Shown one piece after another: positions 13,312-57,242 of a DNA stretch of 64,000 bases (positions within the stretch are counted from its first letter, which is position 1; each line of letters starts with the position of its first letter). The notes beneath the pieces were generated by a model that was given only the letters and a program-made list of their open reading frames with translations, had not been told where the DNA came from and searched no databases. This stretch comes from Octopus sinensis (taxonomy: Eukaryota). Both the position numbers and the translations under genes were made by a program. The stretch is taken from the NCBI RefSeq assembly GCF_006345805.1, contig NW_021833300.1, forward strand, positions 1 to 64,000, given 5' to 3'.

Positions 13312-13482
13312 TTATGAGTAAGGAGATGATATATACTTCGCATTGAAAGTCAACACTTGTGGATCCCACGAAAACGGCTTTGCAAGGATTTTATCTTTCT
13401 GGAACCATGATGTAGAATTGGTCCCTGTTCCATTGAAAACGAATGCAAAATAATCCAAACTTGATTTCACCCGAAATTCCAC
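13312..13482 (-). CDS. Copy B exon 3 (terminal) of secreted PAN-domain gene
   Basis: Acceptor tttccatttgcag|GTG, phase 0; VEFRVKSSLDYFAFVFNGTGTNSTSWFQKDKILAKPFSWDPQVLTFNAKYISSPYS*. Confidence 0.85.
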   Translation of the reverse strand: MEFRVKSSLDYFAFVFNGTGTNSTSWFQKDKILAKPFSWDPQVLTFNAKYISSPYS

Positions 13483-15059
13483 CTGCAAATGGAAAGTAAA
13501 CTCAAACAAGTGACAAATCTCAGAGAATGAGGAATGGCAGAATTGTAGGAAGAGAAAGGAGACTAGGATATGATATATGGAGAGAGTAGGAGGGCGAGAA
13601 TGAGATGGACAGAATTGCGGGGAAAGTGTGACACTTTGAGTGCAGAAGAAAAAAGACTAAAGAAGACAATGAGTTGTGGGAAGAGGATAAGAGGAGGAGA
13701 GAGATAGAATGTGAGAATGACAGAGAGACAGACAGACAGAAGGAGGGAAAATGAGAAGACGAGATGCTATGTCGCGTTAGAAGTGCAAAATTAAGACAGA
13801 AATTGATTGGGTTTGAGAGGAAAACGTGGCTGACTTACGAGACAGAGAATCAGACTACTAACTAATGAGTCATGATTTCGGAGTCTTTCTAAAGGTTTTG
13901 TTGCATCTATAGGAACTAGAAAACCCTGACAAAATCAGGACAAAACAAAGACAAAAACAGCAAGAATCGATCCCACATCAAAGACATATCGATGTTCTGT
14001 GGAGGAATCAAGAGAGATATCAGGAACGGAAGTAAAGGAGTTGTGACGTCACCTCAAGAAAGGGGCTTTTGATCTGCCTCTTCCTTGGTCAAGACTCTTA
14101 GGTGGAGCGGATGCCAGAGGGACGGTAGCTTCTGACCAAATGCTGGGTTAGTGTAGGTGTGTAGGTGTGTCCAACAAGTTCTTTTGACCCTGGTAGAGTT
14201 TAGCTTTTCTGAAGTTCGTCTCGAATTAAAAGCATTTTTACTGTCCCATCTACATATTCGTGAGTTTCATCCTTCCACCTCTCCCTTTTAAAATGCAAGA
14301 AAAACGTTTTTCCTCGCTGACACAGAACCTTCTCATAATCTCTCCCCGTCTTTCTCCACCTCATGTCTACTCAACCCTATATTCTTACACTTATAACCAC
14401 TCACCATTCTTATTTCAATCTTAGCAGTAAAAATTCTTTGCTATTCTACTTCAAAATATTTATTCCTCATCGATCCAATTCAGGTGTTAATTCATCGCTT
14501 TCCAAACTCCTCCTTAAATCCCCTTTTCTTCTTAATTATAATGCTCATAATGCCTTTTAACCTCCGCGCTCTTCTTACACCAAAGCACCGATGACGGGAT
14601 TGAACCATTCCACATTCTGATCCATTTGTACCAGTCTCTTTCGTAACCTAGAAGTATTCCTCGTCAACACACTGATTCAATATCCAGACACTCTCGGTTA
14701 TGTTGCTGTCTATGAAATCCCGCGTCTCTACGATCTGATGACGTTTGTCATATTATGCTATCGTTCCTTGAAGGATGAAAGGCAAAGCCGACCTCGGCGC
14801 AAATTGAACTCGGAAAATAAAGATCCGGAATTAAATACCACGAGCATTGTGTTCTACGCTCTAATTATTCTGATTCTTTTATAATAATCATAATAATAAT
14901 AATAAAAATAATAATGAGAAGAAGAAGAAGAAGAAGAAGAAGAAGAAGAAGAAGAAGAAGAAGAAGAAAATTGGAAGAAGAAGAAGAAGAAGAAGAAGAA
15001 AGAAGAAGAAGAAGAAGAAGAAGAAGAAGAAGAAGAAGAAGAAAAAGAAGTGGAAGAAG

Positions 15060-16130
15060 AGGAGAGGATCTCTGTGGAACAGGATGACTGCCTGCAACAA
15101 GGTCGCGCCCCTGCTTGGATGACAAGCGAGCGAACGCTGTTAATGCGTCAAGGACCCCTTGAAAGGATCTTGCAAACATCAGGTAAGTAACAATCTATTA
15201 CCTAAAGAACAGAAAGGCTGCAGGAACCAAAGTAGGGCAACAAAAGATCACCTATTAGATGATAAAATGATAATTAGAAATCGCAGAGGTGGATGATTGG
15301 CAGGAGTGAATGTAGCATGGTTAGATTATAAAAAAGCGTATGACATGGTAGCACACAGTTAGATAAGTGAAACAAGGAGCAGGTTTGAAATAGCAACAAA
15401 AAAAAGCATGGAGAAAATGCTAAATGAAAGTATGGAACATTGGAATACTGAAATGATCGGAGAAAAACAAAAACCCGGAAAAGTGAACATCAGACGTGGA
15501 ATATTTCAAGGTGATAGCTTATCTCCGTAACTATTCGAATTGGCCATGAAAAGGGAAAATTGCTTACGATTTGGTTAAAGGAAATGGTCAGATAAATCAT
15601 CTCCTTTTCATGGACGATACAAAAGTTTATGCGATAAATGAGAAACAGTTTGAAAATCTTGTGAATATTATCCGCATTTTCTCAAATAACGTTGCTATGG
15701 AATTTGGGATAGAAAAGTGCGCTATATTGAAAATAAAAGGAGGAACATTTGAAAGAAGCGAGGGAATTGAAATGCCAAATGGGCAAAGAATGGGAGCAGT
15801 TGAGAAAGGACGGTGGTAAAAGTAGTTGGGAATACTGAAAGCAGACGAAATAAAAATGAATGAAACAAACGACCAATTGGGAGTACACAAGGAGAGTAAG
15901 AAAATCATTGCAGTCAAAGCTGAATTCCAAAACCCTTATTAAAGCAAAGATCAGTGTCATTAATCAGATACCCGACGAAAATGATGAAAATCTAAATAAA
16001 AGGCCGGACCTTAGTCCCCAAATCTCGCTAGTGAAACAGAAAAAAAAAGGAGAAATAAATACGAGAGGAATAGGTTTCTATGCGTCGTGTATATTTTATA
16101 GCAACACTCTTGCCACAAAATGAAAACGCT
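15060..16130 (+). pseudogene. Degenerate R4/Dong-like RT fragment in intron 2 of copy B (mirror at ~53810-54920, -)
   Basis: KKAYDMV, RRGIFQGDSLSP and INHLLFMDD..MEFGIEKCAIL motifs, with stops and frameshifts. Confidence 0.75.
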
Positions 16131-16362
16131 GCACAATATTCCATTGAAATTTAGAAGGAAAATTAGTCTGGATCTAGTTCTATCGTGAAACCCCGCCAAA
16201 GAAACTTGCTAACATAAAAAGATAGATTTTAAAAATGAAACAAACATCAGAAACTGAAATTAAACATTTAAAAGAAAACACTAGTAATTATTGTAAAACA
16301 ACAACAAATATGTAGATTGGTTATTAAATGAGAATCATCTTGAAATTCTAAAAATTCATTAC

Positions 16363-54929: not shown

Positions 54930-55610
54930 TCTCTTCTTCTTCTTCTTCTTCTTCTTCTTCTTTCTTGTCTTCTCTTCTTTCTTTTCTTCTTTTCTGCTTC
55001 TTCTTGTCTTCTTCTTCTCTTCTTTCTTCTTCTTCTTCTTCTTTCTTCTCTTCTTCTTCGTCTTCGCCTTCTTCTTCTTCTTCTTCTTCTTCTTCTCTTC
55101 TCTTCCTTTCTTGCTCTTCAATCCGGCTTCTTTCGTTCTCTTCTTCTTTCTACATCTCTTATAATCTTCTTTTCATCTTCTTATTTCTTCTTCTTCTTCT
55201 TCTTCTTCTTTTTCTTCTTCTGTCTCTTTTCTATGTCTTTATTCTTCTTCTCTTTCTCTCTTCTTTCTCTTCTTCCTATCTTCTTCTTTCTTCTTATTCT
55301 TGCTTCTTTAATTCTTCTTCTTCTTCTTCTTCTTCTCTTCTTCTTCTTCTTTTCTAATTCTTCTTAATCGTCTTCTTCTTCTTCTTCTTCTTCTTCTCTA
55401 ATTATTCTTCTATTTTAATCATTTTTCTCTCTTCTTCTTCTTCTTCTTCTTTTTCTTCTATTCTTTCTTCTTCTTCTCTTTTCTTCTCTTCTTCTTCTAA
55501 TTCTTCTTCTATTCTTCTTCTTCTTCTTCCTTCTTCTTTCTCTTCTTCTTCTCTTCTTTTTCTTCTTCTTCTTCTTCTTCTTCTTTTTCTTTCTTTTCTT
55601 CTTATTAGTT
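54930..55610. repeat. Degenerate (CTT)n tract
   Basis: ~680 bp here versus a ~150-bp (GAA)n tract at the homologous 14915-15060. Confidence 0.85.
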
Positions 55611-57071
55611 ATATATTGTTATTATTGTATTATTATTATTATTATTATTAGTAGTAGTAGTAGTATAGTAGTAGTAGTAGTAGTAGTAGTATTTTTATTG
55701 TTATTATTATTATTATTATTATTATAAAAGAATCAGAAGAATTAGAGCATAGAACACAATGCTCGTGGTATTTAATTCCGGATCTTTATTTTCCGAGTTC
55801 AATTTGCGCCGAGGTCGGCTTTGCCTTTCATCCTTCAAGGAACGATAGCATAATGTGACAAACGTCATCAGATCGTAGAGACGCGGGATTTCATAGACAG
55901 CAACATAACCGAGAGTGTCTGGATATTGAATCAGTGTGTTGACGAGGAATACTTCTAGGTTACGAAAGAGACTGGTACAAATGGATCAGAATGTGGAATG
56001 GTTCAATCCCGTCATCGGTGCTTTGGTGTAAGAAGAGCGCGAAGGTTAAAAGGCATTATGAGCATTATAACTAAGAAGAAAAGGGGATTTAAGGAGGAGT
56101 TTGGAAGGCGATGAATTAACACCTGAATTGGATCGATGAGGAATAAATATTTTGAAGTAGAATAGCAAAGAATTTTTACTGCTAAGATTGAAATAAGAAT
56201 GGTGAGTGGTTATAAGTGTAGGAATATAGGGTTGAGTAGACATGAGATGGAGAAAGATGGAGAGAGATTATGAGAAGGTTCTGTGTCAGCGAGGAAAAAC
56301 GTTTGTCTTGCATTTTAAAAGGGAGAGGTGGAAGGATGAAATTCACGAATATGTAGATGGGACAGTAAAAATGCTTTTAATTCGAGACGAACTTCAGAAA
56401 AGCTAAACTCTACCAGGGTCAAAAGAACTTGTTGGACACACCTACACGCGTACCCCAGCATTTGGTCAGAAGCTACCGTCCCTCTGGTATCCGTTTCACC
56501 TAAGAGTCTTGACCAAGGAAGAGGCAGATCAAAAGCCCCTTTCTTCCGTTCCTGATATCACTCTTCATTCCTCCACAGAACATCGATATGTCTTTGATGT
56601 GGGATCGATTGTTGCTGGTTTCGGCTATTCTTTTATCCTGATTTTGTCAGGGTTTTCTAGTTCCTATAGATGCAACAAAACCTTTAGAAAGACTCCGAAA
56701 TCATGACTCATTAGTTAGTAGTCTGATTCTCTGTCTCGTAAGTCAGCCACATTTTCCTCTCAAACCCAATCACTTTCTGTCTTAATTTTGCACTTCTAAC
56801 GCGACATAGCATCTCGTTTTCTCATTTTCCTTCCTTCTGTCTGTCTGTATCTCTCTCTCTCTCCTCCTCTTCCTCCTATGTCTTGTCTTCTCTACTCTTT
56901 TTCTCCTGCACTCAATGTCTCACTCTTCCCCCACCACTGTTCTCTCCATCTCATTCTCGCCCTCCTACTCTCTCCTTATATCACATCCTAGTCTCCTTTC
57001 TCTTCCTACAACTCTGCCATCCCTCATTCTCTGAGATTTGTCACTTGTTTGAGTTTACTTTCCATTTGCAG

Positions 57072-57242
57072 GTGGAATTTCGGTTGAAAAAAGAAGCTAG
57101 TTCTTATGCATTCGTTTTCAATGGAACAGGGACCAATTCTACATCGTGGTTCCAGAAAGATAAACTCCTTGCAAAGCCGTTTAAGTGGGATCCACACACT
57201 GTGACTTTCAATGCGAAGTATATATCATCTCCTTACTCATAA
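57072..57242 (+). CDS. Copy C exon 3 (terminal)
   Basis: tttccatttgcag|GTG; VEFRLKKEASSYAFVFNGTGTNSTSWFQKDKLLAKPFKWDPHTVTFNAKYISSPYS*; spliced CDS 331+92+171 = 594 nt = 197 aa + stop. Confidence 0.85.
   Translation: MEFRLKKEASSYAFVFNGTGTNSTSWFQKDKLLAKPFKWDPHTVTFNAKYISSPYS

What the first reader, a model, noticed from the sequence alone, without database searches (positions are those of the whole stretch)
13312..57242. Head-to-head pair of a spliced, secreted PAN + unnamed-domain gene not visible in the ORF track
Seen: exons of 331, 92 and 171 nt with canonical GT-AG sites and matching phases (1, 0) give an intact 197-aa ORF in both arms (B 18882-13312 -, C 51148-57242 +). The introns are almost entirely transposon debris. 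A third, more diverged paralog keeps an exon 3 of identical length at 527-697. Known: the C-x3-C-x5-C-x2-F-x-Y...C pattern behind a signal peptide is typical of PAN/Apple domains, which bind proteins or glycans. Inference: the C-terminal W.KVF..WD.L.I..V.F....FNGTG..STSWF region resembles an unnamed domain I recall from uncharacterised mollusc and other invertebrate proteins, apparently shorter here. This would be a locally expanding family of small secreted recognition proteins (immune, mucus, salivary or gamete related); its function is unknown.
Basis: partly seen in the sequence, partly recalled or inferred. Interest (0 to 1): 0.8.

Follow-up and report, generated by a model that had tools for sequence, protein, structure and literature searches.

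The report
Octopus PAN-domain gene pair, mis-modelled ends

Summary
The model is truncated at both ends.

- **3' end.** Exon 3 ends 25 nt earlier, at AA|GTATAT (C 57217, B 13337, A 672). Two further intact exons follow in all three window copies and in three O. sinensis copies. They complete a 134-aa beta-sandwich, giving a CDS of 240 aa (C) or 241 aa (B) from the exon-1 ATG.
- **5' end.** A 5' exon (ATGAACCTTAAAG|gtaagt at 38734, + strand) supplies the MNLKG start seen in RefSeq relatives. Only C has it. Its mirror is deleted from the B arm.
- **PAN.** The call is supported by fold, cysteine pattern and relatives, though Pfam scores fall below threshold.
- **C-terminal domain.** It is homologous (hhalign 99.2%, E 3e-19) to the core of a roughly 175-185-aa unnamed domain. 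That domain occurs in amphioxus, echinoderm, hemichordate, bivalve and nemertean mosaic proteins, and has no Pfam or PDB match.
- **Divergence.** B and C are arms of a palindromic segmental duplication. Their differences cluster in two hypervariable patches of the C-terminal domain.

Function remains inferred: an extracellular binding protein in a fast-diversifying, octopus-specific family. Closest relatives are O. sinensis and O. bimaculoides "uncharacterized" or "Apple domain-containing" proteins.

The parts
38734..38746 (+). Gene C exon 0, coding part (ATG AAC CTT AAA G | gtaagt). The 5' UTR extends upstream for an unknown distance. It supplies MNLK plus the first base of Gly.
   Evidence: this is the only copy in the window, and it has a perfect donor. 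It matches the MNLKG start of RefSeq relatives and exon 0 of O. sinensis loci L001, L002 and L003.
51146..51478 (+). Gene C exon 1 (acceptor tttttcag|GA ATG). It encodes the hydrophobic leader and the PAN/apple module.
53552..53643 (+). Gene C exon 2 (92 nt), the start of the C-terminal domain (KSWQKVFEMT...PIEK).
57072..57217 (+). Gene C exon 3 as re-annotated (146 nt, donor GAA|gtatat). It holds the invariant FNGTGTNSTSWFQKDK motif and both hypervariable patches.
57218..57242 (+). First 25 nt of intron 3. They would be coding only if intron 3 is retained.
   Evidence: The same read-through occurs in NCBI model P0007, whose locus nevertheless has intact exons 4 and 5.
57755..57861 (+). Gene C exon 4 (107 nt; attag|T TTC AGT ... 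AGTA|gtaagt), encoding FSYPNFTIAYDSRRVEVKRKSGNKEEYDISYKYFS.
60778..60824 (+). Gene C exon 5 (47 nt including the TAG stop), encoding the final strand ...VYIYEAIVISVILK*.
   Evidence: The final strand has pLDDT of about 92 in the domain model.
18552..18884 (-). Gene B exon 1, with the same acceptor context as C, but no exon 0 was found for it.
16363..16454 (-). Gene B exon 2.
13337..13482 (-). Gene B exon 3 (146 nt). It differs from C mainly in two short patches.
12706..12812 (-). Gene B exon 4.
11760..11809 (-). Gene B exon 5 (50 nt including the stop).
527..672 (+). Paralog A exon 3. Exons 0-2 lie beyond the left edge of the window.
1754..1866 (+). Paralog A exon 4 (113 nt).
2842..2891 (+). 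Paralog A exon 5 (50 nt including the stop).
11700..24719 (-). Left arm of the palindromic segmental duplication: gene B, an intron-0-like sequence and sequence upstream of exon 0. The junction at 24234/24240 marks the deletion of the exon-0 segment.
38025..60885 (+). Right arm of the duplication: upstream sequence, exon 0, a 12.4-kb intron 0 with extra insertions at about 40.5-49.0 kb, and gene C. Positions 38508-38959 have no mirror in the left arm.

Best explanation
**Gene structure (shown).** The locus encodes paralogs of an octopus-specific gene family.
- The gene has six exons.
  - Exon 0 is a short 5' exon holding the 5' UTR and MNLK/G.
  - Exon 1 encodes the hydrophobic leader and a PAN/apple module with 8 cysteines.
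  - Exons 2-5 together encode a 134-aa beta-sandwich.
- The product is about 245 aa from exon 0. From the exon-1 ATG it is 240 aa for C and 241 aa for B.

**Domain identity (shown).** The beta-sandwich is a cut-down version of a roughly 175-185-aa extracellular domain that has no name.
- In amphioxus, starfish, hemichordate, bivalve and nemertean proteins that domain sits beside ZP, EGF, Sushi, C-type lectin, TSP1, D8C or PAN modules.
- Bivalves have the same PAN-plus-domain architecture.

**Function (inferred).**
- The protein enters the secretory pathway. This rests on the leader, the conserved N-x-T/S sequons and the paired cysteines.
- It acts outside the cell as a binding protein.
- The PAN module, which is under purifying selection, provides a constant protein or glycan contact.
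- Two hypervariable surface patches of the C-terminal domain change specificity between paralogs.

**Family growth.**
- The family grows by local segmental duplication. Here that is a palindrome with arms at 11.7-24.7 kb and 38.0-60.9 kb; in O. sinensis the copies are both tandem and divergent.
- B and C differ mostly by wholesale replacement of short patches rather than by scattered point changes.
- Gene B has lost its exon 0 and the flanking 452 bp, so it may be silent or may use another promoter.
For: **Gene structure.**
- Exons 1-3 and their junctions are verified in B and C.
- Exons 4 and 5 are intact, with canonical sites and matching phases, in A, B and C. The same holds for O. sinensis copies Os1 and Os2 and LOC118768101.
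- Full-length RefSeq relatives carry the same C-terminus...FSYPNFTIEY..EAKRESGN.EKYDIS...YEALVISVILK.
- Exon 0 has a perfect donor and the correct phase.

**PAN.**
- Pfam PAN_1 and PAN_4 score E = 0.005.
- The cysteine pattern is conserved. C79 and C101 are lost together in P0004, which points to a fourth disulfide.
- In the Foldseek search of the window's own exon-1 model (AF2), most of the top 42 hits are PAN/apple-type modules, with probability up to 1.0 and TMq 0.53-0.60.
- Bivalve relatives pass the PAN_1 threshold.

**C-terminal domain.**
- The AF2 model has pLDDT 86 and pTM 0.80.
- There is no Pfam match, no PDB sequence match and no significant fold match.
- An exhaustive HMMER search found 53 relatives, including multi-domain invertebrate proteins.
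- hhalign gives 99.2% probability at E = 3e-19.

**Selection and divergence.**
- dN/dS is 0.3-0.6 for the PAN part in five of six pairs (0.95 for B vs Os2). It is 1.2-1.8 for the C-terminal domain.
- Twelve of the 44 B/C differences fall in one 20-nt window (permutation p <= 5e-5).
- Those differences coincide with the family's hypervariable columns.

**Duplication architecture.**
Against: - No transcript evidence was available, so every junction is inferred from sequence and homology.
- NCBI models for the nearest O. sinensis loci are short or chimeric (P0001, P0002, P0007). Some may reflect real alternative 3' ends, for example the alternative terminal exons at 57602-57685 and 58107-58238.
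- PAN scores for the window's own proteins are below Pfam's gathering threshold, and the PAN model has only moderate confidence (pLDDT 72.6).
- dN/dS above 1 in the C-terminal domain is not significant (Fisher p > 0.19). It is also compatible with relaxed constraint.
- The homology to the unnamed domain covers only 84 of 186 profile columns. The octopus version lacks that domain's two invariant cysteines and its GW motif.
- No ligand, tissue or expression data exist.
- The leader could be a signal anchor.
- Gene B lacks exon 0.
Confidence: 0.6

Rival explanations
1. The reader's three-exon, 197-aa protein is the real (or main) product. Transcription would end, or intron 3 would be retained, just after exon 3, and exons 4 and 5 would be relics.
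For: - The read-through ORF closes after 8 codons in all copies.
- NCBI model P0007 (LOC118768101, 203 aa) has this form.
Against: - Exons 4 and 5 are intact, with conserved splice sites and phases, in six loci from two species, including the P0007 locus itself.
- Most RefSeq relatives include them.
- The truncated product would lack about the last 50 residues of the domain, roughly five predicted strands of a confidently predicted sandwich.
Confidence: 0.1
2. Gene B is a transcriptionally orphaned duplicate, a young pseudogene-in-waiting. Its intact ORF reflects only its recent origin. On this reading the 'pair' is one working gene (C) plus a relic.
For: - The 452 bp that contain exon 0 and its flanks (38508-38959) are missing from the mirrored position 24234/24240.
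- No other exon 0 exists in the window, even allowing 3 mismatches.
- Three O. sinensis loci (L001, L002, L003) carry an exon 0, and L001 keeps this segment contiguous.
- dS between B and C is only 0.057. My estimate is that an ORF could survive by chance for that long.
Against: - All five B exons and all splice sites are intact.
- B's changes are concentrated in the same patches that vary among functional-looking paralogs, not spread at random.
- The exon-1 ATG (METT) could serve as a start from another promoter. RefSeq models P0004 and P0008 start at METT/METS.
Confidence: 0.4
3. The protein is a type II membrane protein held at the cell surface by an uncleaved signal anchor, rather than a secreted protein.
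For: - The hydrophobic segment ILLLLPALTLLLFVTLVTA is 19 uninterrupted residues with a mean Kyte-Doolittle score of 2.62. That is transmembrane length.
- It is preceded by a 13-18-residue polar N-region.
Against: - A small-residue motif (V-T-A|G) follows the hydrophobic core.
- A proline sits mid-segment, and the equivalent region in paralogs ends in T-G/A-x-S. These features fit a cleavable signal peptide.
- No predictor was run.
Confidence: 0.25
4. The inverted B/C arrangement is an assembly artefact, either a mis-oriented contig or collapsed and expanded haplotypes, and not a real palindrome.
For: - In O. sinensis locus L001 the two closest cassettes lie in direct orientation.
- The central 24.7-38.0 kb is highly repetitive.
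Against: - The arms differ by 8-10% and by large indels, which is far more than allelic variation.
- The window contains no runs of N.
- O. sinensis also has a divergent pair: LOC118768098 on the minus strand and LOC118768100 on the plus strand, 46 kb apart.
Confidence: 0.1

Closest known systems
Octopus sinensis LOC118768100, LOC118768098 and LOC118768101, and O. bimaculoides LOC106867736, LOC106880400 and LOC106876623 (RefSeq 'uncharacterized protein'; UniProt 'Apple domain-containing protein')
   Same: - Same family and same exon structure.
- 83-88% identity to the nearest members and 53-60% to the others.
- Same chromosomal cluster type.
   Different: - The window's copies are not in the protein collection, so they are a different species or unannotated. 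Non-coding identity to O. sinensis is about 91-93%.
- The nearest RefSeq models are chimeric or truncated, whereas the underlying loci have the full five coding exons.
- None of these proteins has been characterised, and no paper was found.
Bivalve PAN + unnamed-domain proteins (Dreissena polymorpha KAH3750350.1 = P0035; P0050)
   Same: Same two-domain architecture: PAN_1 above Pfam threshold, followed by one copy of the unnamed domain. Size is similar at 253-268 aa.
   Different: - The bivalve domain is full length, about 183 aa. It has the G.G..v.d.W insert, two invariant cysteines and the GC..D.GW motif.
- The octopus version is 134 aa, has no cysteines, and aligns only over the central 84 columns.
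PAN/apple modules of plasminogen, HGF N-domain, factor XI/prekallikrein and apicomplexan microneme proteins (Pfam PF00024, PF14295)
   Same: - Fold: a helix packed on a beta-sheet.
- Cysteine core C..C-x3-C-x5-C...C...C.
- These modules dominate the top Foldseek hits.
- They have a general role as protein- or carbohydrate-binding modules (established knowledge).
   Different: - Sequence scores are below the gathering threshold (17.1 vs 21.4 bits).
- There is an extra cysteine pair (C79/C101).
- There is a single module rather than tandem apples, with different partner domains.
Mollusc fibrinogen-related proteins (FREPs) and ficolins
   Same: - Works-like analogy only: secreted invertebrate binders in multigene clusters with patchwise diversification.
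- Fibrinogen-like domains give the best, though non-significant, fold scores for the C-terminal domain (TMq 0.43-0.49).
   Different: There is no Fibrinogen_C Pfam hit, the Foldseek E-value is at least 0.1, TM is below 0.5, and the domain is about 90 residues shorter. It is not a member.

Membership tests
PAN/Apple domain (Pfam PF00024 PAN_1, PF14295 PAN_4) | Profile HMM score at or above the curated gathering threshold | tested here: not met
   - Protein C: PAN_1 17.1 bits against a cutoff of 21.4, and PAN_4 17.3 against 27.
- Protein B: 13.4 and 15.0 bits.
- Distant relatives with the same architecture do pass: P0035 at 22.7 bits and P0050 at 24.9 bits.
PAN/Apple domain (Pfam PF00024 PAN_1, PF14295 PAN_4) | Conserved cysteine framework (six core cysteines; C-x3-C-x5-C centre) | tested here: met
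   - C46, C63, C67, C73, C83 and C99 are invariant or nearly invariant across 11 family members.
- The extra pair C79/C101 is lost together in P0004.
- Disulfide connectivity itself was not determined.
PAN/Apple domain (Pfam PF00024 PAN_1, PF14295 PAN_4) | Alpha/beta fold: central helix packed against an antiparallel sheet | tested here: met
   - AF2 model of window 51232-51480: pLDDT 72.6, pTM 0.66, with strand-helix-strand topology.
- Foldseek against PDB: most of the top 42 hits are PAN/apple-type modules (plasminogen, HGF N-domain, Eimeria PAN, FXI A4, MIC4, SML-2, MANEC).
- Probability reaches 1.0 and TMq is 0.53-0.60, but E-values are only 0.014 or above.
Unnamed ~175-185-aa extracellular domain of marine invertebrate mosaic proteins (alignment A4) | Significant profile-profile homology | tested here: met
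   - hhalign of A2 against A4: probability 99.2%, E = 3e-19, 84 aligned columns.
- hmmsearch with the octopus profile hits these proteins at E = 3e-26 to 1e-3.
Unnamed ~175-185-aa extracellular domain of marine invertebrate mosaic proteins (alignment A4) | Full-length domain with two invariant cysteines, an invariant Arg and the G-C..D.GW motif | tested here: not met
   - The octopus domain has no cysteines and is about 40-50 residues shorter.
- Only template columns 40-125 of 186 align.
- It is a derived, reduced version.
Fibrinogen-related domain (Pfam PF00147) | Sequence profile match or significant fold match | tested here: not met
   - No Fibrinogen_C hit at E <= 10 for 11 octopus domains, nor at E <= 1 for 10 full-length domains.
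- The best Foldseek hits (Angptl3, ficolins, FGL1) have E >= 0.1 and TMq <= 0.49.
Octopus 'Apple domain-containing / uncharacterized LOC' family | High full-length sequence similarity and shared exon structure | tested here: met
   - E = 2e-103 and 83% identity to LOC118768100. There are 14 family hits, all from Octopus.
- Identical exon boundaries in O. sinensis loci.
Secreted protein (classical signal peptide) | Cleavable N-terminal signal peptide predicted by a dedicated tool or shown experimentally | not testable with these tools
   Only a hydropathy scan was possible. It shows a 19-residue core with a mean Kyte-Doolittle score of 2.62, followed by VTA|G. That is compatible with either a signal peptide or a signal anchor.

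The most novel reading that the evidence does not exclude
The C-terminal beta-sandwich may represent an undescribed extracellular domain superfamily, with no Pfam, PDB or named relatives. It is spread across deuterostome and lophotrochozoan marine invertebrates. Octopuses would then have reduced it to a 134-aa core, fused it to PAN, and be diversifying it by templated replacement of short surface patches between clustered paralogs. 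That would make it a cephalopod counterpart of diversified recognition families such as snail FREPs.
Probability: 0.2. Interest if true: 0.65.

Novelty: new member of a known kind. Interest (0 to 1): 0.35.

Why it matters
**Annotation.** The finding corrects a gene model.
- The window's genes, and at least three RefSeq models in O. sinensis, are truncated or chimeric.
- The full six-exon structure gives a foldable two-domain protein.

**Domain discovery.** It points to a widespread invertebrate extracellular domain that has no Pfam entry and no solved or recognisably similar structure.
- That domain co-occurs with ZP, EGF, Sushi, C-type lectin, TSP1 and D8C modules.
- It is a reasonable candidate for curation and structural work.

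**Cephalopod biology.**
- The family is restricted to Octopus in a search of 1.8 billion representative proteins.
- It sits in rearranging clusters.
- It concentrates change in two patches of one domain.
- This is the pattern expected of recognition molecules, in a group whose immune and chemosensory repertoires are poorly known.
- Nothing here shows what it binds or where it is expressed.

Tried and rejected
- **Pfam, PDB-sequence and Foldseek searches (PDB, BFVD) of the C-terminal domain.** None gave a significant match. The recurring fibrinogen-like hits stay below significance, so I did not file the domain there.
- **DUF7922.** It hit only the amphioxus protein P0020, with no single passing stretch, and hit none of the isolated domains. 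I dropped it.
- **Literature.** Searches for octopus with apple or PAN domain, and for six LOC identifiers, found nothing relevant.
- **A second exon 0 for gene B.** None was found with up to 3 mismatches or by sensitive BLAST.
- **Positive selection.** Pairwise Nei-Gojobori dN/dS exceeds 1 in the C-terminal domain, but Fisher tests are not significant. Loops are not significantly more variable than strands (p = 0.15).
- **Transposon origin of the exons.** Rejected. The exons match only family proteins.
- **Transposon content of the introns.** This could not be assessed properly without a repeat library.
- **Spliced window protein in structure prediction.** I modelled the window's contiguous exon-1 product and a homolog's C-terminal domain instead.
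- **The 13-nt identity between exon 0 (ATGAACCTTAAAG) and the alternative-exon region at 57622/12945.** Only 14 nt align. I treat it as chance or unexplained.

Full report
**1. The observation**

- In arm C, 51148-51478 (331 nt), 53552-53643 (92 nt) and 57072-57242 (171 nt) are bounded by AG|…|GT. They join in phases 1 and 0 and translate to 197 aa without a stop.
- The mirror exons in arm B (18882-18552, 16454-16363, 13482-13312) have identical splice-site contexts and give a 197-aa product.
- A third copy, A, has the equivalent of exon 3 at 527-697.
- This is not chance. The product matches 14 Octopus proteins, the best at E = 2e-103 and 83% identity.

**2. The gene model is truncated at the 3' end**

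Most relatives are 226-286 aa. After ...TFNAN they continue with FSYPNFTIEY…LEAKRESGN.EKYDIS…YEALVISVILK. tBLASTn with these proteins finds that sequence downstream of every exon 3 in the window.

Reading the DNA shows three things.
- Exon 3 ends at a conserved donor GAA|GTATAT (C 57217, B 13337, A 672).
- Exon 4 is at C 57755-57861, B 12812-12706 and A 1754-1866.
- Exon 5 is at C 60778-60824, B 11809-11760 and A 2842-2891.

All three copies have canonical sites and matching phases, and all are open. The five-exon CDS is 240 aa for C and 241 aa for B.

The same five exons are intact in both cassettes of the O. sinensis locus L001.

In the predicted structure, the residues encoded by exons 4-5 form the last five strands of the sandwich, and the final strand has pLDDT of about 92. 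The 197-aa form therefore cannot be excluded as a minor isoform, but it is unlikely to be the functional product.

**3. The gene model is truncated at the 5' end**

RefSeq relatives start MNLKGMETT. Exon 1 is preceded by an acceptor (tttttcag|GA ATG).
- At 38734 (+) the window has ATGAACCTTAAAG|gtaagt. Spliced to 51146 this gives M-N-L-K-G-M-E-T-T.
- It is the only such site in the window, even allowing 3 mismatches.
- It corresponds to exon 0 of three O. sinensis loci.
- It serves gene C across a 12.4-kb intron.

**4. Architecture of the pair**

Self-comparison shows that B and C are arms of a large inverted duplication.
- 12253-18944 matches 58328-51086 at 90-92% identity. The exon-5 region (11700-12174 against 60241-60885) also matches.
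- On the 5' side, 22659-24234 matches 40523-38960 and 24240-24719 matches 38507-38025. The duplicated unit therefore included intron 0 and sequence upstream of exon 0.
- The 452 bp at 38508-38959, which carry exon 0, have no mirror in the left arm. In O. sinensis this stretch is contiguous, so the left arm has most likely lost it.
- Gene B therefore has no recognisable first exon or promoter-proximal sequence. Whether it is expressed is open.
- The right arm is longer because of insertions at about 40.5-49.0 kb and a 38-bp satellite in intron 4.

In O. sinensis the family forms a cluster on CM016885.1. LOC118768098 is on the minus strand. LOC118768100 is on the plus strand, holds two direct cassettes, and lies 46 kb away. 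LOC118768101 is on the minus strand. Divergent neighbours occur there too, but the arrangement differs in detail.

The RefSeq model P0001 joins exon 1 of one cassette to exons 2-3 of the next and to an alternative terminal exon.

**5. The N-terminal module is PAN/apple**

- Pfam PAN_1 and PAN_4 hit at E = 0.005 but below the gathering score.
- Across 11 family members the six core cysteines are invariant or nearly so. The additional pair C79/C101 is lost together in P0004, as expected of a disulfide pair.
- An AF2 model of the window's own exon-1 product has pLDDT 72.6. In the Foldseek search against PDB, most of its top 42 hits are PAN/apple-type modules, at probability up to 1.0 and TMq 0.53-0.60. 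E-values are modest, at 0.014 or above.
- UniProt names the O. bimaculoides relatives 'Apple domain-containing protein'.
- I accept PAN on fold, cysteine pattern and family context. I note that the HMM threshold is not met.

**6. The C-terminal domain**

- A model built from an 11-sequence alignment is confident (pLDDT 86.4, pTM 0.80). It is an 11-strand beta-sandwich with one short helix.
- It has no Pfam hit, no PDB sequence hit, and no fold match at E < 0.08 in PDB or E < 0.007 in BFVD. TM-scores stay below 0.5. The best scores are to fibrinogen-like domains, which is not significant.
- An exhaustive HMMER search of 1.84 billion representatives found 53 proteins. These are the Octopus family plus distant hits.
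- The distant hits come from amphioxus, Acanthaster, Ptychodera, scallop, Mytilus and Dreissena. In them the matched stretch is part of a repeated domain of about 175-185 aa, found next to ZP, EGF, FN3, Sushi, C-type lectin, TSP1 or D8C modules. In two bivalve proteins it lies directly after a PAN domain.
- A nemertean relative also appeared.
- No source names this domain and no Pfam model covers it.
- Profile-profile comparison gives 99.2% probability at E = 3e-19 over 84 columns. The most conserved motif is F-[ND]-G-x-G-[ST]-[ND]-x-x-[ST]-W-F-x-K-[DS].
- The octopus version lacks a roughly 35-residue insert near the N-terminus, the two invariant cysteines and the GC..D.GW motif.

**7. How the copies differ**

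- Pairwise dN/dS among B, C, Os1 and Os2 is 0.3-0.6 for the leader plus PAN in five of six pairs, and 0.95 for B vs Os2. It is 1.2-1.8 for the C-terminal domain. None of the latter is significantly above 1.
- Exon 3 of B and C is only 84.9% identical, less than the introns.
- The differences are not scattered. Twelve of the 44 differences fall in one 20-nt window (permutation p <= 5e-5). A second block of 5 of 6 nt lies 90 nt downstream.
- These blocks coincide with the family's most variable columns, domain residues 35-46 and 63-76.
- Residues 1-34 and the motif at 47-62 are almost invariant.
- This looks like patch replacement, by small conversion tracts or complex indels, on a conserved scaffold. 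It fits diversification of a binding surface, but relaxed constraint is not excluded.

**8. Mechanism**

Shown:
- the gene structure;
- the two-domain architecture;
- membership of the Octopus family;
- homology of the C-terminal domain to an unnamed invertebrate extracellular domain;
- the palindromic duplication;
- the clustered divergence.

Inferred:
- Entry into the secretory pathway. This rests on the hydrophobic leader, the conserved N-G-T and N-S-T sequons, the paired cysteines and the exclusively extracellular partner domains in relatives.
- An extracellular binding role, with PAN as the constant contact and the variable patches tuning specificity.

Unknown: ligand, tissue, and whether the leader is cleaved. 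It is a 19-residue core with a mean Kyte-Doolittle score of 2.62.

**9. Novelty**

The family is already present in RefSeq and UniProt as uncharacterised predictions, so the genes are new members of a known but unstudied kind. The more interesting residue is the unnamed domain and the patchwise divergence. No paper on either was found.

**10. Not verified**

The claim that the introns are mostly transposon debris could not be verified.
- Only 0-36% of each intron matches other sequence available here.
- 1.7 kb of intron 4 is satellite.
- LINE reverse-transcriptase fragments do lie in intron 0 and between the genes.

Noticed in passing
window 58359-60067: A 38-bp satellite (about 45 copies, 93% matches; consensus TCTATGGGTCGTGGTCATGTGCTCTGGTAGTAGGCGGA) sits in intron 4 of gene C. 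It is absent from the B arm.
   Followed up: partly
window 33271-34581 (+), 45461-46711 (-), 19091-19909 (+), 10310-10999 (-): These ORFs carry reverse-transcriptase (RVT_1) or zf-RVT domains and are LINE-type retroelement fragments. 33569-35488 and 47098-45199 are 94% identical inverted copies.
   Followed up: partly
window 40520-41104 and 44745-44163: A 585-bp inverted repeat at 99% identity flanks about 3 kb inside intron 0 of gene C. It could be a recent insertion with long terminal inverted repeats, or a very young inverted duplication.
   Followed up: no
window 24245-31430: A unit of about 2.5 kb is repeated three times in tandem. Its 460-bp head is at 24245, 27466 and 29978 (96% identical), followed by satellite-like sequence. 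This occupies the centre of the palindrome.
   Followed up: no
window 57602-57685 and 12968-12882; 58107-58238 and 12465-12343: - Intronic stretches match the odd C-termini of RefSeq models P0001 (FDKKIDEG…) and P0013 (…NPSSGNLRRNGADNCFPC…).
- These may be alternative terminal exons or Gnomon artefacts.
- The first begins with ATGAACCTTAAGG, a 13-nt near-copy of the exon-0 start.
- It lies directly after a repeat that also occurs elsewhere (57424-57617).
   Followed up: partly
L001 (O. sinensis CM016885.1:17229270-17291719), L002, L003: - RefSeq models in this cluster are chimeric (P0001 joins two cassettes) or stop early (P0002, P0007), although intact exons lie downstream.
- The whole cluster, more than 230 kb, lies inside one gene call for a 103-aa histone-fold-like product (CENP-T_C/TAF).
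   Followed up: partly
P0015 (O. sinensis LOC118764386, 402 aa) and P0009 (LOC118761791, 286 aa): - P0015 carries two tandem copies of the C-terminal domain after the PAN module.
- P0009 has a repetitive (V/D)SSAND insertion of about 35 residues ahead of the PAN core.
- The family's architecture is therefore still changing.
   Followed up: no
window 60856-61579, 21620-22165, 36488-36936, 49424-50034, 20509-20923, 31044-31427, 2925-3341: (TACA)n-rich blocks of 400-700 bp recur at least seven times on both strands. One lies immediately 3' of exon 5 in copies A and C.
   Followed up: no
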